Positions 11,073 to 35,859 of a stretch of DNA of 64,000 bases are shown in pieces; within the stretch, counting starts at the first letter, position 1; each line of letters begins with the position of its first letter. A program made the translations under genes and the position numbers. The DNA comes from Selaginella moellendorffii (Eukaryota > Plantae > Lycopodiophyta), in contig NW_003314264.1 in the NCBI RefSeq assembly GCF_000143415.4, forward strand, positions 1,253,624-1,317,623, written 5' to 3'. Below the pieces are notes generated by a model. That model made no database searches, was not told the origin of the DNA, and worked only from the letters and a program-made list of their open reading frames with translations.

Positions 11073-14000
11073 ATGGCAAGGGTAGGACGTAAGCGAACCC
11101 AGGCAGAGACGGAACCTCCTCCAGAGCTGGAGCCTCCGGTCGAACAGGAGGTGATGGATGAGGAATCCTTGCATGAGGAGGACTCCAGTGAGGCAACTTC
11201 CAAACAGGAGTCTGGTGGTGAGGTTCGGTCATCCAAGGCTCGATTGGATGTTCTAGAAGGAAAATTGGCACAGACCAATGCCCTGCTAGAGACTCTCGTA
11301 CGCAAGCTAAAGCGTGACGACAAGCGGAAGAAAAAGCGAAAGACTGCGGATGCTGGCAGCGCAGAAGGTGCGAACCCTTCGGCAGGGACTGAGGCAAAAC
11401 CAGACAAGGTCGAACAGACCGAAGTGGAATCAGTCCCTCAGGTAGTTCCCAAGTACAAACCAAAGCCCCCACCGGTCTTCAAGGGAGTGAACGACTATAA
11501 GGTGGTGGAGGATTGGTTTTACGATATGGAGGACTACTTCCGAGCGTTGCGATTACCAAGCTCGGAGAAGGTCCCATGTGCAAAACCATACTTGGCAGAT
11601 AATGCCAAGTCTTGGTGGAGAATGACAGAGGCCAACGAAGGACCAGTGGCCACTTGGGATATGATGAAGGCGAGGATCCGCGCAACTTACGTTCCTCCGA
11701 ATGCTACTCTGCATCTAAGGGACGAGCTGAGTAGGCTGAAGCAGACCGGAACCATTCAGGAGTATGTGAATGGGTTTATGGCAAAGAGGATACTTGTCAC
11801 GGACATGGGGGATATGGATGCGTTCCATGCCTTTATATCAGGTTTGCAAACCTGGGCTCGCGGCGAAGTAATGCGGTGGAACCCGACCAACTACAAAGAA
11901 GCGTTGGATGCGGCCATCAAGGTGCATTTCAACGATAATCTGCGAAAGGGGAACACGATGGGGTCGGGATCCACGTTTAGCAAAGGGGCCAAACCAAGGG
12001 GAACGTTTAGCAGAGGGAAATTCAAGAAGAGTTTCTCTAAGAATGAGTCCTCGGGGTTCCGGAAAGGCAGATCCGGTGGCCAGCGAGCGAGTACGTGGGG
12101 GAGTCAGGCGAAAAGAGACAAACCCACGGATAAGAAGGTCAAGTCATATAGCAGCGTGGGAAACAACGTATGCTACAACTGCGGTGAAGTGGGACACTTC
12201 TCGAGGGAATGTCCCTACCCGAAGAAGGCCAGAGCCAATATGGCCATCAAGTCGGGTGAAGTCCAAACAGAGGTATGTGATCCAGTCCCTAACTCAAAGT
12301 TACTCATTACACGAGCAACTTTGGTAGAGAGTCGTTCGCGACATCTACTAGCCCTCCGAGGGAAGCTCGGAGGTAGCTTTGTTAAAATCCTTATTGACAC
12401 GGGTGCTTCGGATAATTTTGTGGCTGCAGACATAGTCCGGCAAGCCGGACTAACGGTGCAGCGGCTAGGCGAACCAAGGACTATAGAGTTTGTTCAAGGT
12501 AGCCAAAGCACCGATGAGGTACTTCGACAAGCGAGAGTCGAAGTGGGGACTTGGAAGGTGGACATGGACTTCACCGTGTTGGACATGGCGGGATTTGACG
12601 TGATCTTCGGAATGGACTGGTTCAATCGATTCGTGGTAGCCCTGTATGGACAAGGTAGAAACCTTGTGGTACTGGCGAATGCCCAAGGAAGAAGATCTAG
12701 GGTGGAGGCCCAAGATCTAAAGGTAGGGCAAAGCAAGGCCAAAGATTCCTGCTTAAACCTGGTGTCCACGAGAGGACAACTCACTAAAGGAACTAAGGCG
12801 GCCTTTTTGTGCTTACTCTCGGTGAAGAGTGACAAAAAGACAGGAATGGAAGAAGTACCTTTAGTGATCCAACGGGTGTTAGACCAATTCCAGGATACCA
12901 TGCCGGAGGAGCTACCGGCGGGGCTACCCCCAGCACGACCGATAGAACATAAGATTGAGCTGGTCGAGGGTGCTGAGGCAGTGGTTCGTCCCCCTTATCG
13001 TTTGAACGAAAAAAAACTCAAGGAGCTCAAGTGCCAACTAGAGGAGTTGGTGGACAAAGGGTATGTTAGGTTGAGCAAGTCGCCGTATGGGGCGCCAGTG
13101 TTATTTGTGAAAAAGAAAGATGGATCTATGCGCATGTGCATAGACTACCGCTTGCTCAACAAGTATACAAAGAAGAACAAGTACCCTTTGCCAAGGATTG
13201 AGGACCTGTTCGATAGGTTGGGAAAGGCAAAATACTTCTCGAGGATTGACCTAAGGTCAGGATACTACCAGATCAGGGTAGCCGAGGAAGATGTCGAGAA
13301 GACAACCTGTCGAACGAGGTATGGGAGCTTTGAGTTTCTGGTGATGCCCTTCGGGCTATGTAATGCGCCGGCAACGTTTTCGGCGCTAATGAACCACGTC
13401 TTTGTACCCTATCTGGATCACTTTGTAGTCGTCTATATCGACGACATCCTGATCTATAGCGAGACGCTAGAGGAACATGCCGAACACTTGGCGAAGGTGT
13501 TTGAGAAACTAAGGGAACACAAGCTGTATGCTAAAGAGAGCAAATGTGACTTTGCTCAACAAGAGGTAAAGTTTCTCGGGCATGTGGTGGGCCAGGACGG
13601 GCTCAAGGTGGACCCGGAGAAGGTCCAAGCGATCCAGGAATGGGAGCGACCATCCAATGTACACGAGTTGAGGGCATTCCTGGGGCTATGCAACTACTAT
13701 CGAAAGTTTATCAGACACTATTCGAGAGTAGCCCTGCCCTTAACGGACCAAACAGGAAAAGGGAAGATGGTGTGGACAGCGGAATGCGAGGCGGCATTAG
13801 TCCACCTCAAAGGGAAGTTGAGGAAGGCTCCCGTATTGGCATTACCAGACTTTGGTAAGGACTTTGAGGTAGAAACGGATGCTTCGGACTTTGCGTTGGG
13901 CGTAGTTTTGAAGCAAGACAACCATCCGGTAGCGTTCTTCTCGAAGAAGCTGGACAAGGCTCAACGGAAGTGGCCTGCCCACGAGAAGGAATTGTTTGCG

Positions 14001-15844
14001 GTGGTCAAGGCGCTTAAGGAGTGGCGACACTACCTTGGGAGACACTTCAAGGTTTACACGGACAATGTGGCAACGAAACACTTCTTGTCACAGCCCGACC
14101 TAAGAGGGAAACAAGGTCGGTGGGCCAATGCCTTGGCCGAGTTTGATTGCGAAATTTTGTACAAGCCTGGGAAGAGCAACATCGTGGCGGATGCGCTAAG
14201 TCGAAAAGCGAGCTTGAGGTTGGCAATATCCAGCGCAACAGCAACCTTCTGGGACGATGTGCGGACAGCATATGAGAACGATGGTCTAGCACAAGAAGTG
14301 TTGTTGAGGAATCTAGAGGCGCAGGAAGCTCACCAGAGAGGTGAGCTGCCAACGAAAGAGAAAACGGGCTATGTGGAACGCAACGGACTCATTTATTACA
14401 AGCAAACGAGGGTGTATGTTCCAGAAGGGGAACTAAGGAAGGTGGCCTTAGAAGAGTGTCATGACGGACCTCTTGCGGGACATGGTGGAGTGCCCAAGAC
14501 GATGGGCTTACTCAAAAGGAAGTACCATTGGCCAGATATGGCGAAGGACGTCCAAGACTATGTAAAGACATGTCCAACATGTCAGCAGGTAAAAGCCGTG
14601 ACTAAGGCTAGTGGGGGCTTGTTGCAAAGCATCCCAATTCCAGATCGCCCGTGGAAATGTCTTACGATGGACTTCATCACGGGACTCCCCCCAAGCGAGG
14701 GGTTTGATGCGATATTCGTGGTGGTGGACCGATTTTCGAAAATGGCATATTTCATACCCACCACAACAGAAGTGGATGCGGAAGGTGTGGCGAAGCTGTT
14801 CTTCGAGCAAGTGGTTCGAGTGCGGGGAAGACCAGAAGAGATCATCTCAGATCGAGATAAGATCTTCACCAGTAGGTTCTGGAGGACTCTCCTCGAACAG
14901 TATCGCACCAAGTTGAAATTCAGCACAGCCTATCACCCACAGACAGGTATGGGGTATTAAGTCAAGTTGTTGGCACTAACACTTCTTGACAGACGGACAA
15001 ACGGAAAGGGTGAATAGGCAGCTGGAGGATTATTTGCGATGCTATGTCTCGGGAGACCAGACCGATTGGGTAAGTCATTTGGGACTTGCAGAAATGTGTT
15101 ATAACAACTCACCACATTCGAGTATCGAGGTGAGTCCATGGGAAGTCATCAATGGGCGAGCTATTGAAGGTCCCGTGGAACTCGGCGCGGCCGAGTATCA
15201 TGGAGAGTTGCCTGCAGTGGAGGCATTCACGGCGGAAAGACTTAGCATTTGGAATCTAGTGAGGGATTCCTTGGAACGGGCTCAACGAAGGCAAACCAAA
15301 TACGCGAACCAGAAGCGTCGGGATGTAGAGTTCCAAGCTGGGGAGAAGGTGTGGCTGAACACCAAGAACCTCAGACTACCAAGTGGGATCAGCTGAAAGT
15401 TGACCCAAAAGTAAAGATGCATGTATTCCTGTAAATGAATTGATCTTGAGTTCCTTAAGCAGGTTCGCGGGGCCTTACGAGATTGAGGCACGAATCGGTA
15501 AAGTGGCTTACCGACTCCGACTTCCTCGAGAGATGGGGAAGATGCACCCAGTGTTCCACGTGAACTTACTCAAGCCGTACTTTGAGGATCCGCTTCGCAA
15601 GGACCAAGTGAGACCTTTGCCTGAGGTTATCCAAGGGGAAGAGGAATACAAAGTCGAGGCCATCCTCAATGCGCACAAGAGCAAGCGACAAGGACGCGAG
15701 GTGAGAGAGTTCCATGTGAAGTGGAGAGGATTTTCACACTGCGAAGAAACATGGGAACCGGAGGAGAACCTAGCGAACGCTCGAGATCTAGTGGAGGAAT
15801 TTCTGCAAGGCAGAACTCTATGTACTTATGCAAAATTCAATTAA
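11073..15844 (+). CDS. Gag-Pol polyprotein (Gag, CCHC, PR, RT, RNase H, IN, chromodomain); two introns (14947-14992, 15411-15462) and one in-frame TGA (15394-15396)
   Basis: [48 protein letters not shown]; splicing restores [12 protein letters not shown] and KLTQKFAGPY; chromodomain [21 protein letters not shown]. Confidence 0.92.
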
Positions 15845-20328: not shown

Positions 20329-20853
20329 ATATTGGGGATAGGGTTTGGCTCCTTAGGCGAAATATCTCCACCACCAGGCTATGTCCCAAACTTAATTTCA
20401 AATGCCTCGGTCCTTTCCTTATCATTGCCATTATTAATCCTATCAGTTATTGCCTTGCACTTCCCTCCTTATATCAAATTCACCCTGTTTTTTACTCCTC
20501 TCTCCTTATATTCCCAATCCTATTTCAAATTAGGTCATTCCTCTGCCTCCACCAGTGCAGCTCGAGGATGGGTCTGAGTACGAGGTTTAGGACATCCTTG
20601 ATTCCAAAATCTCATGGTCTAAACTCTACTATCTGATAGACTGGAAGGGTTACAGACCTGAGGAACGCACTTAGGAACCTACAGACAACTTGATTCATTC
20701 TCCTGACTTTGTTCAGGACTTCCACCGCCGCTATCCTTCTTGTCCTAATCCTCATTCTTTTCATTCTCCATCTCTTGTCCTTCGACATCCATCTCATCCT
20801 CCTCTTCATTCTCATTCATGTCCTTGTTCCACTCATTCTTGAGGAGGGGGTGC

Positions 20854-21527: not shown

Positions 21528-24500
21528 ATGGATGCCTCTTCATCTAGAAAGCGTGGGCGAGAGCCGGATGAAGAGGAGGAGAGAAAGCGACTTAAAAGAG
21601 GTGAGATTGCTCATATGAGCTTTCATCTGGAGTCGGCGCTTGCGGAAATTGCAGACCTTGAATGTAAATTGTGGGAAGCCGGGGAGGATGCCGAACTAAA
21701 GGAGCAGATAGCCTCAGAGAAAGTGCGGGCGAGTCAACTCCAGGAGGATATGTCGAAACTGGAACGCGAGCTCTCTGAAATCCTCCAGCCGCCACCTGAA
21801 TACTGGAAAAGAGTGGAGGGTATTGCCGAATCAGCATTTGCGCAGGAGTACCAAAGAGTTGGGGGATTAGACAACGTGGAGTCGTTGCGTGAGAAGCTGG
21901 AAGAAACAGGAGAGGACTGGAAGACGAAGAAAACCATGATAGCACCTGTTGTCACGTTAGTTCAGTCGAGTGGCTGGGGAAAGTCGAGGACTACCTGCGA
22001 GCTTGCGAATTTAGGTGTGTTCGTCATCTACTGCTCATTCGCCTCATCTGGCACCGCGTACCCTCCAAGGTCTGCCTTTGCGGACTTCTTCTACACAAAC
22101 GCCGTCAAATTGCTCAGCTCGGGTTCTACGCTTTTGTCGCAGAGCAGGTTCATGCTCTTCTGCATTGACTACTTTGTGTCATGCATCGAGGCTCTTCTGC
22201 ATCTGACTTCCGGGGAGGACCCCATGGATGCCAAGAAGTTCTTGAACGATCTCATGGTTGGGAAGAACTTTTGGGACGTGGTACAGGCGAAGATGGAGAT
22301 AGGAAACAAAGCCCGGGAGGAGTTTGCTAATCGCCTTGACGTCGACCTGAAAGAGAAGCCTGGCGAGAAAAGCAATATGTGGGGCATCTGGGAAAGTAAG
22401 GTGTTTAAGAAGTACAACACGCTTGAAGGTCTACTGTCGAATGTTCCAGCTCCTGCCAAAGGAAAACTGAAGGTCCTGTTTGTCATGGACGAAGCCCGAT
22501 GGTTTACTTCGCATGCTGATCCGACAACTGTTGCTGCATTTGTTCCTGCAAGGAGGGCTTCCAGAGTGTTGCCTGAAAATGGAAGTGTGTCGGTGATGTT
22601 CACCGACACAGACGGGAGGCTAAACAGTTTTGCGCCGCCCAATAAGGCATCCGGTTTAGGGTTTAGTAGCGATCGAGTGGCTGCGGCGGGAAAGCTAGTT
22701 GCACATCCAGCGTACTGCTTTTTCTTGGCAGACTTGCCATCGGACGAACAAACAGGTGGCCTTCTGCTTGCTCAAGTTGAAGATCTGGGTCGTCTTTGCG
22801 GCTATGGTCGGCCACTGTGGCAAGCATTGGTGAAGGCTTCCGCAAGTGCACGTGACGTGCTGCTTTTGGCTGTAGATAAGCTCCTGGGTGGCACTGGTTC
22901 GTTCGACAAGTGTATGCTTGAAAGAGGAGGTCTATCACATGAGGCTTGTCTGGCTACACTGGGCTGCAGAGTATGCATTGACATCAATCCGCATGCCACA
23001 ATTATCACTGATATGGTTGCAAGTCACCTACTTAGCGTGATGTCCATTTCTGATGACCGGACTCTTGTTTGGACGCATTGGGCTACGGAGCCACTGGTTG
23101 CAGCGGCTGCAGCACAGGTTTTGCGTGCACAAGGGAAGGTTGGGACAGGGTGGAAGGAGTGCTTGGAGGCACTTGTAACTGGGATGAAGCGTGGATGGGT
23201 TGATCGAGGTTACAGGGGCGAGTTGGTTGCACGGGTGCTGCTCCTACTTGCAGTGGATAGTCTAGGCAGAAATTCATGGAAGTGCTTTACTTTTGACGAG
23301 CTTTGCCGTGGCTTAAGTGGGAAGTCGCTGTCCGATCTTATTAGAGAAGGTGAGCAGAATTCAGCATCTCCGACCCCCAAAGCTCCAGATGGTGGAGGAG
23401 AAGTGCAGGTCGAAGTAAACATGCCACCACCTCCGGCCTCGGCTTTGAAGCGTAGGAGAAGGGTTAAAGGAAACAAAAAAATTCCGGGTCAGCCGCAGGT
23501 GGCTTCAGCGTCCCTGTCCAAAGCTCCAGGAGAAAACGCGCAGGTCAAAGTAAAGACGCCGCCACCTGAGGTGAAGTTGCCATCTCCAACGCTGACGGCC
23601 TCGAAAGCTCCAGGTGGAAGTACGCACACTGCTGAAGGTGAAGGGGAAACAAAACAAGCAGGTGGCTCTATAGATGGAAGTGGTAAAGAAGAAATCCACA
23701 GAAACATGGGTGAAGCCAAGTTTTTTTGCTTGCTATTCAGGAAAACCGACTTCCGACTGCAGGAGCTCACCGCAAAAGATTTGCTTGAATTTGGAAAGGC
23801 TGGCGTAGGAATCATTTGCTGTGAAAATGAATGGGGCATAGACATCGTCATCGTTGGGTTCTTTGGTGACACGTTTAGCCTGGAGACGATGACACTCATT
23901 TTGGTGCAGGTGAAACACACAGAGAAACATGATGTTGATTTAGCATGTGCTAAATGCTCTCCGGAGTTTTCTCAGATGTTCAGTAGCAGTGCAGGGCCTC
24001 AAGGTTGGACTGGGTTGAAGGTGCCATATGCCCGTCTGGTTTTGAATGTGGCCCATGTGCCTTCCAGCAGTGTTCGTTACAGAACTAGGAAACTTGTCGC
24101 AGAGGCATTGCTGAAGAAGAAGCCTACAAATCATTCCATGGCAATGGCTCTCCATGATGCTCATCTGGAATGCAAAGGCCTTCAGGAATGGACAAAAGGC
24201 TATGATGGGGATAGATCACACCCGGTATTCAAGTCATGGGAACGGTATTTTGCTTCAGATGATCGTCTCCAACACATTGTGGTTATTGAAGGTACGTTTG
24301 TGCTGTTTCATTTTCAATCACTTGATGTTATCTTTTGCACTCCAGGTTTGGATGCATTCTCATCCAAGGACGAAGTGAAAGACCTGGTCGACATCTCTCT
24401 GGATTCTACTGCAGACATGAGGAAACTAGAACAAGTTCAGAAGACGTATGCACATAGAATGTTCGGATGGGTTAAGAACACAGTAATGCGCAAGTGTTTG

Positions 24501-24605
24501 GAGCCAAAGCTCAGTGTGAAAAAGAGTAAGTAAAATTGAGATTTTTTTTGAGAAATAATCTGAATTTTTTTCTCCATTGCAGAGGTGCAGATGGAATTAT
24601 CTTAG
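21528..24605 (+). CDS. Crinkler/RHS-type (CR) protein: coiled-coil header + P-loop NTPase + PD-(D/E)xK restriction-endonuclease-fold domain
   Basis: Walker A LVQSSGWGKSR, Walker B LFVMDEA, GYGRPLW, RGELVARVLLL, nuclease-like GIDIV...ILVQVK; predicted introns 24292-24345 and 24526-24582; TAG at 24603-24605. Confidence 0.82.
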
Positions 24606-29975: not shown

Positions 29976-31197
29976 ATGGCGACGGTGTGTGTCACTGGCG
30001 CATCGGGCTTCTTGGGATCCTGGCTGGTGAAAAGGCTGCTGGAAGAGGGGTATTATGTCCGAGGCACCGTGAGGGATCCAGGTGAGTTTGAGTTCTCATT
30101 TTAATCGTTTCTATGGACGAACTTTAAGGTTCTATCGCCTTCGTGCAGATGATCCGAACAAAACGTCGCATCTCTGGAAGCTCAGTGGTGCACAGGAGAG
30201 GCTCACGCTCTTCAAAGCAGACCTTCTCTCAGAGGGCGTCTTCGACTCCATTGTTGACGGCTGTGAAGGGGTTTTTCACGCTGCTAGTGCTGTCACCATG
30301 ACTGCCAAAGATCCGCAAGTAAGCACCGCTTCTTCCTTACGTTCTCTGAGAATGCTGTTCTCCTTTTTCAGGCCGAGATTGTTGATCCGGCTGTGCTGGG
30401 AACTTTAAACGTTCTGCGAGCCTGCAAGAAGCCATCGACTGTCAAGCGTGTCGTGTATACGTCGTCGACGTCAGCAGTGCGCTTCGCCGCTTCCTTCCCC
30501 CAGGATGCGTTTCTGGACGAGTCTATTTGGAGCTCCTCGGAGCTGTGCCGCGAGAACAAGGTTGCTAGAAGTGTACTTACATATTAATTATCCATCTCTT
30601 TTTGTAGTTCTGGTACCCGCTATCAAAAACTCTCGCCGAGCAAGCCGCCTGGGAGTTTGCGAAGTCCAACAATCTCGACCTCGTTACAATCATCCCGAGC
30701 TTTATCGTGGGGTACACGCTGCCACCAGTACCGACGGCCAGCGCAGCCGACTCCCTTTCTCTTTTCCAAGGTACGAGCAAAAACGTTTCTTTCGTTCTCA
30801 AGCTCGATCCAGGTAACGACAAACGCTTCGAGAACTTCAAGTTCATGGGCTACGTGCACTTGGACGACGTTGCCACCGCTCACATCCGCGCTTTCGAAAA
30901 CCCAGCTGCAAACGGACGCTACATCTGCTCGGCAGTGGATGCTACGAACGCGGAGCTCACCGAGTTTCTGGCCGAGAGGTACCCGGACTACAAGATACCA
31001 ACGTAAGCCATGCAAAACTTCTCTTTTTCTTTCCCTTGACTCGTTCTTCCAGATTTCCGGCCTCGAAGAAACCGTACAAAGGCTTGTGCAACGACAAGCT
31101 TGTCAACTTTCTCGGCATGAAGCTCAAGGGACTGGAGGAAATGTTCGATGACGTGGTGGAAGGTTTCAAGCACGGTGGCCACCTCGACCCAAAATAA
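29976..31197 (+). CDS. Tetraketide alpha-pyrone reductase / cinnamoyl-CoA reductase-like SDR
   Basis: [52 protein letters not shown]; multi-exon. Confidence 0.92.
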
Positions 31198-31297
31198 GAG
31201 AAAACGATTTCTCTCGCTCTAACCCTAAAGCTCGGGATTGCTTCTTCCACAGATGACAAGGTGGGAGTCTGGGCCTTCTCTTGGGTAACTAGCAGCG

Positions 31298-32473
31298 ATG
31301 GCGACGATGCCAGAGCCTTTTTGCGTGGGTGATCTTGTGCTGCTGAGTACCGAGGAGATTGATGCCACAATCCAGCCTCCCAAGTTCGTTGGGCCGTATA
31401 AGATCCAGGAGTGCTTGTCCGAGGCAAGTTTTCGGATCCAGGTGCCGGGCTCCATGGGTGTGGAGGGTGTTTTCAGGTTGAGTAGCTTGATCCGGTTTAG
31501 CAGTGGGAGAGGTCCGAGCCGAGAGACGACACCCTCGAGCGGGGTAGTGAATTCGGCTTCTCTCGGTGGTGGAAAGCAGGCGGCTCCAATCCAGGGAACG
31601 AAGAACAAGAAGGAGAAGACGCTGCTTGTCATCGGGGACAATGTAGGAGCCTCTCATTCCATTCCGAGGGACGAACACGAACACTCGAAGCAGGTTTCCT
31701 CGGAGCTTGATCGGCAGGTTTCCGCGGGGACAGTTGAGAGAAGCCAGGATTCGCGGCCAAAAACCAGGAAACTCCGGAAGAAGTACCAGAGCCCAACGCT
31801 TGCGGCTCCAACTCCGGATGCTGCTGCGAGAGACGAAGAAGGAGAAGAAAGACCTCGAGGGATTCAAACAAGCGTAAGCCGCGAGGATGGCAGTGAGCAG
31901 CAAGTTTCGTCCGAGCTGAACGGATCGAGAGCGTCCCAGCGGCGGCTCAAGCGACTGCGAAAGGTCGAGCGAACAGCAGTGTGCCGTGACAACCCGATGC
32001 AGAGCCAAGACAAGATCAAACAAGAAGTTGGCCAAGCGGTAAACCAAGCTCTCAAAGCAGAGGAGGCGCAGTGCTCGACTGATCCGTCCCGGAAAGGAGC
32101 CGAAGAAGAAGGGAAGAGAGGCACTGGCCACAACAGCAGCGGGGCTCCAGCAGATCAAGCGGGAGCCGGAAGAAGCAGCAGAGACGATGCAGGAAAGCAA
32201 AAGATGCTCAAAGAGGAGGAGGAGACGCCCGAGGATGGGACGATGGTGGTCGTGGACGGGGAGCCCGAGTGGGAGGTGGAGTCGATCCTGGAGGATCGAC
32301 TTGCGTGTGATGGGCGGAGGGGTCGTGAGTATCTGGTGAAGTGGAAGGGATACAGTGTGCAGGAATCGACATGGGAGCCTCGCGCAAATCTCACTCACGT
32401 CAGCCGGCTGCTCAAGGAGTTCATCAACAGGAAGAAGAAGAAGAGTGCCGGCAGCGCTGTGAGAGATTCTTAG
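31298..32473 (+). CDS. Stand-alone protein with chromoviral-integrase GPY/F (SH3-like) domain, charged linker and chromodomain
   Basis: FCVGDLVLL..PKFVGPYKI..FRIQVP..VFRLSSL; EWEVESILEDR..EYLVKWKGYSVQESTWEP; intact 391-aa ORF, telobox at about 31221, no LTR or RT nearby. Confidence 0.85.
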   Translation: MATMPEPFCVGDLVLLSTEEIDATIQPPKFVGPYKIQECLSEASFRIQVPGSMGVEGVFRLSSLIRFSSGRGPSRETTPSSGVVNSASLGGGKQAAPIQGTKNKKEKTLLVIGDNVGASHSIPRDEHEHSKQVSSELDRQVSAGTVERSQDSRPKTRKLRKKYQSPTLAAPTPDAAARDEEGEERPRGIQTSVSREDGSEQQVSSELNGSRASQRRLKRLRKVERTAVCRDNPMQSQDKIKQEVGQAVNQALKAEEAQCSTDPSRKGAEEEGKRGTGHNSSGAPADQAGAGRSSRDDAGKQKMLKEEEETPEDGTMVVVDGEPEWEVESILEDRLACDGRRGREYLVKWKGYSVQESTWEPRANLTHVSRLLKEFINRKKKKSAGSAVRDS

Positions 32474-32839
32474 ATCCCCCTGTTGCTTTTCTGACTTGGA
32501 AACAAGCCAAACAAAAGCAGCAACTGCACATTTGTTTCTTTTTTCTTTTATTCTCATGCACATCGACATTAGTTCCGCCATTCGCAACTGTAATTGCTTG
32601 ACATAATTGCTTGATAAGCTGTTAAGTGCTGATAAACTGTAAGCACACCAACCTTAAGATGTAACTACAGAAGAATGTGAAGAGCGTTGATGGCTGGTCA
32701 TTGAGAAAGACAGTGTACGAGAAATCTAAAACCTGCGGACCGAAAGAGAGAATTGGTGATCGCGATCTAAACCTTAAACCCTAAACCTTGGAAGTTTCTT
32801 CTCCTTAGACTATAATATAAAAGGACTTGGAAACCTACT

Positions 32840-35684
32840 ATGAAACCTTTACGAACGATGGTGGCTCTCTCTCAGGCATTCGTGCGCATCTCCTCTCCAT
32901 CTCTTGGGCCCGATCTAGAGGCAGAGTTCTACATCAGCAACGCGTCGAATCATCCCGGCTATGGCATCGCCCTCCTCCAGCTTCTGGGCGAGGCAACAGC
33001 GATCACGCAGGACGATACGTACTGCCAAGCATTGGCTTCCAGTTTCAAGAACCATGTCAAGACTCGATGGAATCCTAGCGACGAGATCACGCTGGGGATC
33101 CAAGATAGTGAGAAGGAGCAGATCAAGAGCTTGGTGGTGAGGTTGATGCTGGCCTCACCGCCGAGAATCCAGAGCTTCCTACGTCAAGCTGTGGCAATTA
33201 TCAGTAGCTATGATTTCCCAAACAACTGGAAAGGGTTGCTGCCGGAACTCGTCATGAGGTTGTCATCATCCACAAGCTATGCTTCCATCCACGTGATCTT
33301 GCGGGCTGTCAACTCTATCTTCCAGAAGTTTGGGCATGGGTCCAAGAGCCCGGAGCTGTATTCGGATCTCAAGTACTGCTTGGATGGATTCGCAGCGCCG
33401 CTGCTGGAAGTTTTCACGAAGATCGGGGCTGTGATAAAGGCTACTACACCTGTGGATGCAGCTACTCTCGAGACGCTGCTTGAGTGCCAGAAACAGTGCT
33501 GCCGGATCTTCTACTCGCTCAACTCGCAAGAGCTTCCAGAGTTTTTCGAGGACCACATCAAGGAATGGATGGGCGAGTTTGAGTACTATCTCTCGTATGA
33601 AAATCCAGCTCTCACATCATGCGAGACTGGCATCATGGATCAAGTCAAGACGGCCGTGTGTGAGAACATCAACCTCTACATGGAGAAGAACGAGGAGGAG
33701 TTTCGAGACTTCCTTCCGACGTTTGCAACAAGTGTCGGGAGCTTACTGATGTCCACGTCTTTGCAACCAGCACAAGACCAACTGGCTATGGCCGCCGTGA
33801 AGTTTTTGACAACGGTGAGCAAGAGCGTGCATCATGGGCTCTTCAGCGGGGCTGATACTCTGAGACAGATCTGCGAACGCATTGTCATCCCAAATGTTCG
33901 AAGTAAGTTTTTTTTAATCCTTCCATCTTTACGTAGGAATCTTTTCTTATGAATCACTCTCTTCTTGTGCAGTTCGCGAGGAAGACGAGGAGCTCTTTAG
34001 AGACAATCCTTGGGAATACATCCAAAGAGATATCGAGGGGAGCGACATGGACACAAGAAGACGTGTGTCTTCCGAGCTCATCAAAGGGCTCATGCTACAC
34101 TACAGGGAGCCAGTTAAAAGTTTAATGGCCGAGTTGCTGCAACGCTTGTGTAGTGTAAGCTCGGGCTCGAAAGACAAGGACACGGCTATCTACTTGATCG
34201 TTGCCTTGGCACAGAGGCAGTCGAGCTTCACAGTTGGAGCTACCACCGATCTCGTCAACGTGGAGCAGTTCCTTGCGTCGCAGATCATCCCGGCACTCCA
34301 AGAAAACGAGCTCCTCCTCCAGGCCAGTGCGCTCAAGTTCGTCACAAGCTTTAGAAGTGCCGCCTCCAAAGCTGTGGCGCTGGGACTGATGCCGCAGATC
34401 ATCAAGCTCTTGCTCAGTGACTCCGTGGTCGTTTGCTCGTATGCCGCATGGTGCGTGGACAGGTTGCTGCTGGTGAGAGACGGAGGAGCGCCACGCTTCT
34501 CCTCGGCGGACTTGGCTCCCTTCCAGGACCAGCTCCTGGCAAACTCGCTCAGTGGATTGCAGCGTCTGGGCTCGCAGGACAATCCTTACGTGATGAAGTG
34601 CATCATGAGAGTTCTATCCTTGGTGGAAGATCAAGCAGGCATGCGCCACCTGGATGGACTGATGGAGATCGTCATCCGAGCTCGAGACAACCCGGCCAAT
34701 CCAGCGTTCAACCATTATGTCTTCGAGTCGGTGTCCGTGCTCGTGAGAAAGGCCTGCCACCACCGCGATCTAGACGTCGTTATGGCCTTTGAGGGGCGGC
34801 TCTTCCCGGTGTTCCAATCCATCCTCCAAAACAACGTCGTGGAGTTCCAGCCATACGTCTTCCAGGTACTTGCGCAGCTGGTTGAGTCAAGAGCCCAGCC
34901 CATCCCCGGAGTGTATCTCCAGCTCTTCCCGATGCTTCTCGCCCAGCTCTCGCAGCAGTCGTCGGGGAGCACCCCTGCCATGATCCGGCTCCTCGAGGCC
35001 TTCTTGCTCAAGGCACCGCGGGAGATAGCACAGGCAAACCAGCTCCAGGAAGTTTGCAACCTTGTCCATGCACTGGTGTCGCGGAGGAGCACTGAGGACT
35101 ATGCCTTCTACATCGCCAATGCGGTGGTGGAGAGCCTCGGGCAGGAGCAGCTGATACAGGCAATTGATCGGAGCCTTTGGACGTCCTTCTTCTCCCGAGC
35201 CATGGGAGGCCAGCGCACTGTCAAGTTCCTCAAGCTCCTGACGCTCTTCATGGCGCTCTTCACCGTCAAGCACGGTCCCGGAGCGCTGGTTGACTCCATC
35301 AACAGGTTGCAGCCGGGGCTCTCCATCAACGTGCTCGAGCAGCTGTGGATCCCGGCTTTGAGCTACATCTCGGGGAGAATCGAGACTAAGCTCTGTGCTG
35401 TGGCGTCGGCGAGGCTTTTGTGCGAGTCGCAAGTGCTTGTGGGCGACCAGATCTTGTGGAGGAAGCTACTGGATGGCGTAGAGACGCTGCTGGAGAGGCC
35501 TGATGAGGAACAAGGACAGGTAGAGGAGGACGTTCCAGAGATGGATATAATGAGTGGCTACTGCGGTGGAGGCTATGCGCAGCTCCACAATTCCGGGAGG
35601 AAGGAAGAGGATCCTCTTAAAGAGATCAAAGACGCTAGAGAATACGTTCGTGCCTCGCTCCAAATGAAGTATCCGGGCCTTTGA
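32840..35684 (+). CDS. CSE1: Exportin-2 (CSE1/CAS)
   Basis: SFKNHVKTRW, IFYSLNSQELPEFFEDH, EYIQRDIEGSDMDTRRR, NPAFNHYVFES; one intron at about 33903-33972. Confidence 0.93.
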
Positions 35685-35859
35685 ATGTGTTAAGTTGACT
35701 AAGGGCTCAATCCAGAGGGTGATAATTTAGGATGAGAACGAAGAACTATCTTATTTTCAGTGTTGTGATTCAACTCTGTCAGAGTGGGGATTTGCAGATC
35801 CAGCTCCTCAGCAATGGCGGTGGTACGTAGCAGAGCTCTGGAGCAGCAAATGTGAGCCG

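What the first reader, a model, noticed from the sequence alone, without database searches (positions are those of the whole stretch)
31298..32473. Apparently domesticated retrotransposon integrase tail: GPY/F-SH3 + chromodomain host gene
Seen: an intact intronless ORF with its own ATG and upstream telobox, packed between two housekeeping genes with no LTR, RT or IN core. The N-terminus matches the post-catalytic integrase module (compare [30 protein letters not shown] in the element at 15.3-15.6 kb). The C-terminal chromodomain keeps aromatic-cage residues (W..W..Y). The usual short spacer is expanded to about 270 charged residues with basic NLS-like runs and a QVSSEL repeat. Inference: an exapted methyl-histone reader, or a decoy competing with chromoviral integrases for target chromatin.
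Basis: partly seen in the sequence, partly recalled or inferred. Interest (0 to 1): 0.8.

Follow-up and report, generated by a model that had tools for sequence, protein, structure and literature searches.

The report
Spikemoss gene from jumping-gene integrase tail
The spikemoss Selaginella moellendorffii has a single-copy, transcribed gene made only from the chromatin-targeting tail of a jumping gene's integrase, so it is a plausible recruited chromatin reader, but I found it in this species alone and its function is untested.

Summary
The window is Selaginella moellendorffii. The 391-aa intronless ORF at 31298-32473 (+) lies between a DFR/CCR-like reductase gene and a Cse1 exportin gene, with no LTR, RT or integrase core nearby.

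- **Domains:** residues 8-74 are a diverged integrase C-terminal SH3/GPY domain. This scores below Pfam's cut-off, but E = 6e-8 when scaled to 1.8 billion proteins. Residues 317-382 are a classical chromodomain with an intact aromatic cage (W325/W349/Y352). About 242 disordered residues between them have no relatives.
- **Copy number:** two loci were found, with the same neighbouring genes, which I read as the two haplotypes.
- **Expression:** both alleles appear in transcriptome contigs from four studies.
- **Constraint:** the frame is not open by chance (0/20000 shuffles). Haplotype divergence is 0.6% against 4.3% in adjacent non-coding DNA. Both indels are in frame. dN/dS is 0.40 on only 7 changes, so it is not informative.

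Weak points: no orthologue was found in any other species. Transcripts reach back into the upstream gene's last exon, so a separate promoter is not shown. Function as a reader or decoy is untested.

RefSeq already annotates the gene, mis-named CHD2. I call it a new variant of transposon-derived genes, of moderate interest. The scan also noted another stand-alone chromodomain candidate in this genome (s1-399019), which has not been followed up.

The parts
31298..32473 (+). Intronless 391-aa ORF including the stop codon. It is the window's allele of the RefSeq gene whose other allele is XP_024542312.1.
31319..31519 (+). Diverged integrase C-terminal SH3-like domain, residues 8-74. It has FCVGDLVLLST and FVGPYKI (the GPY motif). 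The usual IHPVFHVSLL is changed to VEGVFRLSSL, and the loop before GPY is shortened.
31520..32245 (+). Linker with no relatives, about 242 residues (75-316). It has 42 K+R, 39 D+E and 1 aromatic residue. It is predicted disordered except for helices 211-222 and 233-258. Basic NLS-like runs are RPKTRKLRKKYQ (31754-31789) and RRLKRLRKVER (31940-31972). The QVSSEL repeat lies at 31688-31711 and 31898-31921.
32246..32443 (+). Classical (group I, HP1-type) chromodomain, residues 317-382, with cage W325, W349, Y352 and a TWEP motif, followed by a basic tail NRKKKKS.
31253..31288 (+). Short upstream ORF (ATG..TAA, 11 codons), in the same frame as the main ORF and ending 3 codons before its ATG. It is 7 codons long in the other haplotype.
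31200..31252 (+). Transcribed leader that holds the telobox-like AACCCTAAA (31221-31229). In the other haplotype a TA insertion creates a GT..AG intron here, beginning 2 nt after the upstream gene's stop codon, and that intron is spliced in the RNA contigs.
32474..32578 (+). 3' untranslated region. RNA contigs end at 32568-32580 in the three runs whose contigs reach past 32523.

Best explanation
This is a transcribed Selaginella moellendorffii gene found at only two loci, which I read as the two haplotypes. It descends from the C-terminal targeting module of a chromovirus (Ty3/gypsy) integrase: the SH3-like GPY domain followed by a classical chromodomain. The rest of the element (LTRs, gag, protease, RT, RNase H, integrase core) is gone. 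A roughly 242-residue charged, disordered linker with NLS-like basic runs has arisen between the two domains. I infer that it makes a nuclear protein whose chromodomain reads H3K9-type methyl-lysine through the intact cage W325/W349/Y352. The degenerate SH3-like barrel and the basic linker would add non-specific DNA or nucleosome contacts. On that reading it is a lineage-restricted, recruited heterochromatin reader. Shown here: the origin, the restriction to two syntenic loci, transcription of both alleles, the maintained frame, and the folds. Inferred: translation, nuclear location, the ligand, and any benefit to the host.
For: Domains and their order. Predicted folds are confident for residues 1-70 and 317-390 (pLDDT about 90) and disordered in between. 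The chromodomain superposes on H3K9me3-bound chromodomains (Oxpecker, Rhino, HP1; TM up to 0.91, rmsd about 1 A). By sequence the closest solved structures are CDY1, CBX5, Chp1 and SUV39H1. The N-terminal model's best structural matches are the C-terminal domains of MLV, foamy-virus and Ty3 integrases (Z 7.1, 6.7, 6.1). Host-gene behaviour: the protein is found at only two loci, with the same gene order tRNA synthetase, TMEM192, epimerase, this gene, Cse1, CFAP77. No other copy is in the window. Intron-spliced contigs of four studies cover the ORF, and their variants are the other haplotype's alleles, so both alleles are expressed. Constraint: 0 of 20000 shuffles keep the frame open, and 5e-5 for the linker alone, while the other two sense frames have 11-12 stops. 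Haplotype divergence is 7/1164 = 0.6%, against 4.3% in adjacent non-coding DNA (Fisher P = 1e-7) and 1.8% in flanking coding sequence (P = 0.002). pN is 0.0045, below both neighbours. Both indels in the ORF are in frame, 12 and 9 nt. The SH3 has drifted far from the integrase consensus while the frame stays intact, which argues against a young neutral relic. The ATG context gcgATGG is favourable.
Against: No orthologue was found outside S. moellendorffii in the word-index search, the exhaustive HMMER search, or the linker-only search. dN/dS of 0.40 rests on 3 synonymous and 4 non-synonymous changes. pS is also low (0.011 against 0.024-0.044 in the neighbours), so a local dip in diversity or gene conversion could explain part of the conservation. 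RNA contigs run without a break from the upstream gene's last exon into the ORF. An intron that begins 2 nt after that gene's stop codon is spliced in the other haplotype. So these transcripts start inside, or together with, the upstream gene, and if they are only read-through the ORF would be a poorly translated second cistron. An in-frame upstream ORF precedes the ATG. There are no translation, localisation or binding data.
Confidence: 0.55

Rival explanations
1. It is a transcribed relic or proto-gene with no function. On this reading a truncated integrase tail sits in the 3' part of the upstream reductase gene's transcription unit, and the frame is open and little diverged for reasons other than selection on a protein.
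For: RNA contigs are continuous from the reductase gene's last exon into the ORF, and a spliced intron starts 2 nt after its stop codon. No orthologue was found in other species. dN/dS is not distinguishable from 1, and synonymous divergence is also low. An upstream ORF lies before the ATG. Many SH3+chromodomain proteins in the databases are fragments of decayed elements.
Against: An open frame of 391 codons, including about 242 codons with no relatives, is very unlikely by chance. The SH3 is strongly diverged from every sampled integrase yet carries no stop or frameshift. Total divergence is 7-fold below adjacent non-coding DNA, and both indels are in frame. No parent family with this linker was found. 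The transcript has a defined 3' end about 100 nt after the stop codon.
Confidence: 0.25
2. It is a decoy or restriction factor. On this reading the host expresses the integrase's chromatin-targeting module without the catalytic part. The protein would then occupy the methylated nucleosomes, or integrase partners, that group-I chromoviruses (SM-Tcn1, Galahad) use, and so disturb their integration.
For: The gene keeps exactly the module that directs chromovirus integration (SH3 C-terminal domain plus chromodomain). In Ty3 these two domains act together as the targeting unit (10.1101/2021.07.27.453949). Group-I chromodomain elements are present in this genome (PMC3350952), with one in the window. 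Truncated transposon proteins that act as dominant-negative inhibitors are an established principle (my own knowledge: Fv1, Ty1 p22, the P-element KP repressor).
Against: There is no direct evidence. The SH3 has lost conserved integrase motifs, and the two domains are separated by about 242 residues, so integrase-like contacts may be gone. The chromodomain is only 45% identical to that of the element in the window. A plain reader role explains the same data.
Confidence: 0.12
3. It is an ordinary fragment of a multicopy chromovirus insertion that was wrongly called as a gene.
For: It has the domain order of a chromovirus integrase tail, and its closest relative by sequence lies in a real pol context.
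Against: No LTR, RT or integrase core lies on either side. Only 100 bp separate it from the upstream gene's stop codon. There is no similarity to the rest of the window beyond the chromodomain. The protein occurs at only two loci with the same neighbouring genes. The linker has no relative among 5.8 billion proteins.
Confidence: 0.03
4. It is a CHD2-type chromatin remodeller, as the RefSeq product name says.
For: The name given by RefSeq, and PDB matches to CHD1 chromodomains at E about 1e-3.
Against: There is no SNF2 or helicase domain. The protein has a single chromodomain rather than a tandem pair, and is 391 aa long.
Confidence: 0.01

Closest known systems
C-terminal targeting module of chromovirus integrases (Tf1, MAGGY, SM-Tcn1/Galahad with group-I chromodomains; the Ty3 CTD+CHD tandem)
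   Same: Same two domains in the same order. It has the GPY motif and a classical chromodomain with all three cage aromatics. Its closest sequence relatives are such tails (PMC3350952; 10.1101/2021.07.27.453949).
   Different: It is not attached to an integrase core or to any element, and it occurs only at two syntenic loci. The SH3 falls below the Pfam cut-off and has lost the HPVFH motif. The 25-30-residue spacer is replaced by about 242 residues with no relatives.
Integrase-derived domesticated genes of vertebrates (GIN1, GIN2, KRBA2, SCAND3, NYNRIN; PMC3670739)
   Same: They are host genes descended from Metaviridae or retroviral integrases, single-copy or in small families, that picked up host regulatory context.
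   Different: By my own knowledge, not checked against the paper here, those genes keep the catalytic integrase core and zinc-binding region. This gene keeps only the post-catalytic tail. Those genes are conserved across vertebrates, whereas this one has been seen in one species.
Stand-alone HP1-type chromodomain readers (HP1/LHP1, Drosophila Rhino and Oxpecker, CDY, MPP8)
   Same: Chromodomain fold and aromatic cage. The best structural matches are H3K9me3 complexes of these proteins.
   Different: It has no chromoshadow domain or other partner domain of those families. Its chromodomain is closer to chromovirus chromodomains (52.8 bits and 45% identity to the window's element; 51% identity to P0002) than to plant LHP1 (22 bits) or CMT-type methyltransferases (21 bits). 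Its origin is a transposon, not a duplicated host gene.

Membership tests
Chromodomain, classical HP1/Polycomb type (Pfam PF00385) | Profile match above the curated cut-off | tested here: met
   55.6 bits against 25.1, E 4.9e-15, full model 1-53
Chromodomain, classical HP1/Polycomb type (Pfam PF00385) | Three aromatic cage residues (HP1 Y24, W45, Y48) | tested here: met
   W325, W349 and Y352 align with the cage positions of CBX5 and CDY1. Dm HP1 with Y24W is a known binder structure in the hit list (6mha).
Chromodomain, classical HP1/Polycomb type (Pfam PF00385) | Three-stranded sheet packed against a C-terminal helix | tested here: met
   AF2 pLDDT about 90. Strands 327-335, 343-349 and 358-361, helix from 362. 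TM up to 0.91 to solved chromodomains.
Chromodomain, classical HP1/Polycomb type (Pfam PF00385) | Binds methylated histone lysine | not testable with these tools
   Needs peptide binding assays
Ty3/gypsy integrase C-terminal SH3 (Pfam PF24626 SH3_Tf2-1, GPY/F module) | Profile match above the curated cut-off | tested here: not met
   22 bits against 30, E 1.7e-4
Ty3/gypsy integrase C-terminal SH3 (Pfam PF24626 SH3_Tf2-1, GPY/F module) | Significant pairwise homology to integrase SH3 domains, with the GPY/F motif | tested here: met
   Residues 1-80 alone reach E 6.4e-8 to 1e-3 against many integrase tails, with Z set to 1.8e9. FVGPYKI lies at residues 30-36, and G32, P33 and P50 are invariant in the alignment.
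Ty3/gypsy integrase C-terminal SH3 (Pfam PF24626 SH3_Tf2-1, GPY/F module) | SH3-like small beta-barrel fold resembling integrase C-terminal domains | tested here: inconclusive
   Five-strand model, pLDDT 77. The top matches are the MLV, PFV and Ty3 integrase C-terminal domains, but Z is 6-7, in the range that is common for small barrels.
Ty3/gypsy integrase C-terminal SH3 (Pfam PF24626 SH3_Tf2-1, GPY/F module) | Conserved IHPVFHVSLL strand | tested here: not met
   It reads VEGVFRLSSL here. H56 of the family is lost.
Chromovirus (autonomous LTR retrotransposon copy) | LTRs, gag, protease, RT/RNase H and integrase core next to the tail; multicopy | tested here: not met
   Host genes lie 100 bp upstream and 366 bp downstream. 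There is no repeat or pol similarity. The protein occurs at two loci only, with the same neighbours.
Domesticated transposon gene (usual operational criteria) | Single copy, immobile, without element termini | tested here: met
Domesticated transposon gene (usual operational criteria) | Expressed | tested here: met
   Intron-spliced transcriptome contigs of 4 studies cover the ORF from both alleles. 20 runs from 9 studies hold it. An independent promoter is not shown.
Domesticated transposon gene (usual operational criteria) | Syntenic orthologues in other species | tested here: inconclusive
   None appeared in three protein searches, but genomes of other Selaginella species could not be searched directly.
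Domesticated transposon gene (usual operational criteria) | Purifying selection | tested here: inconclusive
   The frame is maintained, divergence is low and indels are in frame, but dN/dS of 0.40 rests on 7 changes.
CHD remodeller (the RefSeq name CHD2) | SNF2 ATPase/helicase domains and tandem chromodomains | tested here: not met
   Only one chromodomain and the SH3 trace were found at E up to 1.
HP1/LHP1 | Chromoshadow domain C-terminal to the chromodomain | tested here: not met
   The protein ends 9 residues after the chromodomain helix, and there is no Chromo_shadow hit.

The most novel reading that the evidence does not exclude
The plant expresses the chromatin-targeting tail of a chromovirus integrase, without the catalytic part, as a defence. 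The protein would compete with incoming chromovirus integrases for H3K9-methylated nucleosomes or partner factors. That would make it a plant restriction factor built from an integrase targeting module.
Probability: 0.1. Interest if true: 0.85.

Novelty: new variant of a known kind. Interest (0 to 1): 0.48.

Why it matters
Genes recruited from transposons are well known, but the integrase-derived ones known to me (GIN1 and its relatives) keep the catalytic core. My four paper searches turned up no report of a host gene built only from the integrase's chromatin-targeting tail. If the protein is made and binds methylated H3K9, it would be a case of a host taking back a chromatin reader from a retroelement. 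It would also be a natural experiment on how chromovirus targeting modules work outside the intasome. If it is only a transcribed relic, it is still a clean example of a possible gene in the making within a very compact plant genome. It also shows that the RefSeq product name (CHD2) is wrong.

Tried and rejected
- **Orthologues or paralogues:** I searched with the word index, exhaustive HMMER on 1.84e9 representatives and the linker alone. Only the other haplotype's allele came back. The remaining hits were chromodomain-only proteins or transposon tails.
- **Earlier notes of this scan:** a search by sequence gave nothing.
- **"Organism B" as a second species:** rejected. All but one of the run variants are the other haplotype's alleles, so it is the same heterozygous clone.
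- **The joint 31199 to 31272 as an odd GA..TG splice:** rejected. It is a canonical GT..AG intron of the other haplotype plus a 12-nt indel.
- **The 432-aa antisense ORF:** it has no family match and is a by-product of the purine-rich coding strand.
- **Remnant LTR or repeat around the ORF:** none found.
- **Contig depth as a test of read-through against an own promoter:** not used, because the tool states that contig depth cannot rank parts of a gene.
- **Zero depth over Cse1:** treated as the tool's filter for conserved genes, not as silence.
- **Look-up of P0102:** not on record.

Full report
**What is there**

The window comes from Selaginella moellendorffii. The protein encoded at 31298-32473 (+) is in NCBI. 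Its 97-99% identical partner is XP_024542312.1, on scaffold GL377614.1 of GCA_000143415.2.

The ORF is 391 codons, starts at an ATG in a good context (gcgATGG) and has no intron. Upstream lies a six-exon DFR/CCR-like NAD-epimerase-family gene whose stop codon is at 31195-31197. I rebuilt its exons from the RNA joints and they translate cleanly. Downstream, a Cse1 exportin gene starts at 32840. So the ORF sits in a 1.64-kb gap between two ordinary genes.

**Domains**

Pfam finds a full chromodomain at residues 325-378 (55.6 bits, cut-off 25.1). It also finds a sub-threshold SH3_Tf2-1 match at residues 28-66 (22 bits, cut-off 30).

The weak SH3 call is real homology:
- The first 80 residues alone hit the SH3 region of many integrase tails, at E = 6e-8 to 1e-3 even with the database size set to 1.8 billion.
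- In the exhaustive search several hits have their best-scoring stretch at residues 9-74.
- An alignment with 33 integrase tails shows FCVGDLVLLST, the GPY motif (FVGPYKI) and invariant G32, P33 and P50.
- The usual IHPVFHVSLL strand has become VEGVFRLSSL, and the loop before GPY is about 10 residues shorter.

AlphaFold2 gives confident beta-rich domains at residues 1-70 and 317-390, with disorder between them except for helices at 211-222 and 233-258.

The chromodomain superposes on H3K9me3-bound chromodomains of Oxpecker, Rhino, HP1, CDY1 and MPP8 (TM up to 0.91, rmsd about 1 A). By sequence the nearest solved structures are CDY1, CBX5, Chp1, SUV39H1 and Clr4, and W325, W349 and Y352 fill the cage positions. 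This is the "group I" type that Novikova and colleagues described in SM-Tcn1 and the Galahad elements of this species (PMC3350952).

The N-terminal domain modelled alone (pLDDT 77) has as its best structural matches the C-terminal domains of MLV, foamy-virus and Ty3 integrases (Z 7.1, 6.7, 6.1). Those Z values are in the range that is common for small barrels, so I count this as consistent, not decisive.

**Origin**

A chromovirus in the same window (11073-15844) carries the same two modules in the same order. BLASTP links both: chromodomain 45% identity, E 2e-13; SH3 32% identity, E 1e-5. The closest database relative, P0002, lies in a real protease-RT-RNase H context.

The chromodomain is much closer to chromovirus chromodomains than to plant LHP1 or CMT-type chromodomains. 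It scores 52.8 bits against the window's element, and 22 and 21 bits against the solved LHP1 and CMT-type chains.

In transposon tails the spacer between the two domains is about 25-30 residues. Here it is about 242 residues, with 42 K+R, 39 D+E and a single aromatic residue. It holds two basic NLS-like runs and the QVSSEL repeat. Searched on its own, the spacer has no relative except the other allele.

**Is it a transposon copy or a host gene?**

- No LTR, RT or integrase core flanks it, and nothing else in the window resembles it beyond two chromodomain pieces.
- The protein is recorded at only two loci, and the gene order is the same in the other scaffold: tRNA synthetase, TMEM192, epimerase, this gene, Cse1, CFAP77. 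The two regions are about 97% identical. I read them as the two haplotypes that this assembly is known to contain (my own knowledge).
- 20 runs from 9 studies hold the stretch. I laid four of them, from four studies. Their contigs splice out the five GT-AG introns of the upstream gene, so they are RNA, and they cover the ORF without a break to about 32523-32580.
- All but one of the differences in those contigs are the other haplotype's alleles. So both alleles are expressed, and "organism B" is the same clone, not a second species.

**Constraint**

- The frame is not open by chance. No shuffle out of 20000 keeps it open, and only 5e-5 do for the linker alone. The other two sense frames have 11 and 12 stops.
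- Between the haplotypes the ORF has 7 substitutions in 1164 sites (0.6%). Adjacent introns and spacers have 4.3% (Fisher P = 1e-7) and flanking coding sequence has 1.8% (P = 0.002).
- pN is 0.0045, below both neighbours (0.008 and 0.012-0.015).
- Both indels in the ORF are in frame (12 and 9 nt), against 11 of 39 elsewhere.
- dN/dS is 0.40 but rests on 3 synonymous and 4 non-synonymous changes. pS is also low (0.011). So a local dip in diversity cannot be separated from protein-level selection.
- GC3 of the two domains (0.67 and 0.71) resembles the host genes (0.64-0.73) rather than the element (0.56-0.58). This is a weak hint.
- My strongest argument is the combination: an SH3 that has drifted far from every sampled integrase, together with a 391-codon frame that has no damage.

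**Weak points**

First, no orthologue was found outside this species in three searches. Genomes of other Selaginella species could not be searched, so age and long-term conservation are open.

Second, the transcript structure. RNA contigs run from the upstream gene's last exon straight into the ORF. The other haplotype has a TA insertion that creates a GT..AG intron starting 2 nt after the upstream stop codon (TAAGA|GTAAAA...CACAG|ATGACAA), and that intron is spliced in all four runs. These transcripts therefore begin inside the upstream gene, or are read-through from it. An 11-codon upstream ORF, in frame with the main ORF, ends 3 codons before the ATG. A promoter inside the neighbour's last exons is plausible in this compact genome, but it is not shown. 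If only read-through RNA exists, translation of the ORF would be poor.

**Mechanism**

My best reading, at about 0.55, is a lineage-restricted recruited gene for a nuclear protein. Its chromodomain would read H3K9-type methylation. The degenerate SH3 barrel and basic linker would add non-specific nucleic-acid or nucleosome contacts.

The decoy idea, competition with chromovirus integrases, is attractive because the gene keeps exactly the targeting module. In Ty3 the C-terminal domain and chromodomain act as one targeting unit (10.1101/2021.07.27.453949). Nothing here tests the idea, so I give it 0.12. A transcribed relic without function gets 0.25. A plain multicopy transposon fragment and the RefSeq "CHD2" reading are contradicted by the data.

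**Novelty**

Four paper searches found no report of a host gene made of the integrase SH3 and chromodomain alone. The integrase-derived domesticated genes listed by Kokosar and Kordis are GIN1/2, KRBA2, SCAND3 and NYNRIN (PMC3670739). By my own knowledge these keep the catalytic integrase core.

The gene is already annotated in RefSeq, under a misleading name. I class it as a new variant of a known kind, of moderate interest. The interest would rise if an orthologue, a protein product or methyl-histone binding were shown.

I did not examine it.

Noticed in passing
window 31199-31272 and L001 5905-5975: A splice site that differs between the haplotypes. A 2-nt TA insertion in the other haplotype creates a GT 5' splice site 2 nt after the reductase gene's stop codon. 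The resulting 55-nt intron is spliced in RNA, while the window's haplotype cannot splice it and keeps the telobox-bearing stretch. A 12-nt indel follows, in frame with the upstream ORF.
   Followed up: partly
window 31289-32587 (-): A 432-aa open frame runs antisense across the whole gene. It has no family match and looks like a by-product of the purine-rich sense strand.
   Followed up: yes
window 32755-35700: The Cse1 exportin gene has zero contig depth in all four RNA runs.
   Followed up: no
window 21528-24533 (+): A 1001-aa intact ORF with no Pfam match at E 0.001. Another first-reader note calls it a Crinkler/RHS-type NTPase-nuclease gene.
   Followed up: no
window 11073-15844 (+): A chromovirus with a 1295-aa gag-pol ORF whose integrase continues in two further frames (14986-15396 and 15440-15844). 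Other notes of the scan read the breaks as spliceosomal introns.
   Followed up: no
window 20576-20731 (+): A second chromodomain-like stretch, 36% identical to the ORF's chromodomain by tblastn. It is probably another element fragment.
   Followed up: no
window 32474-32839: The spacer between the gene and Cse1 is the most diverged stretch between the haplotypes (6.1% substitutions and 66 gap columns). It carries telomere-repeat-like motifs (AACCCTAAACC at 32777) just before the Cse1 start.
   Followed up: no
RefSeq XP_024542312.1 (L001 6001-7173): The product name 'chromodomain-helicase-DNA-binding protein 2 isoform X1' is a misnomer. The protein has no helicase or ATPase domain.
   Followed up: yes
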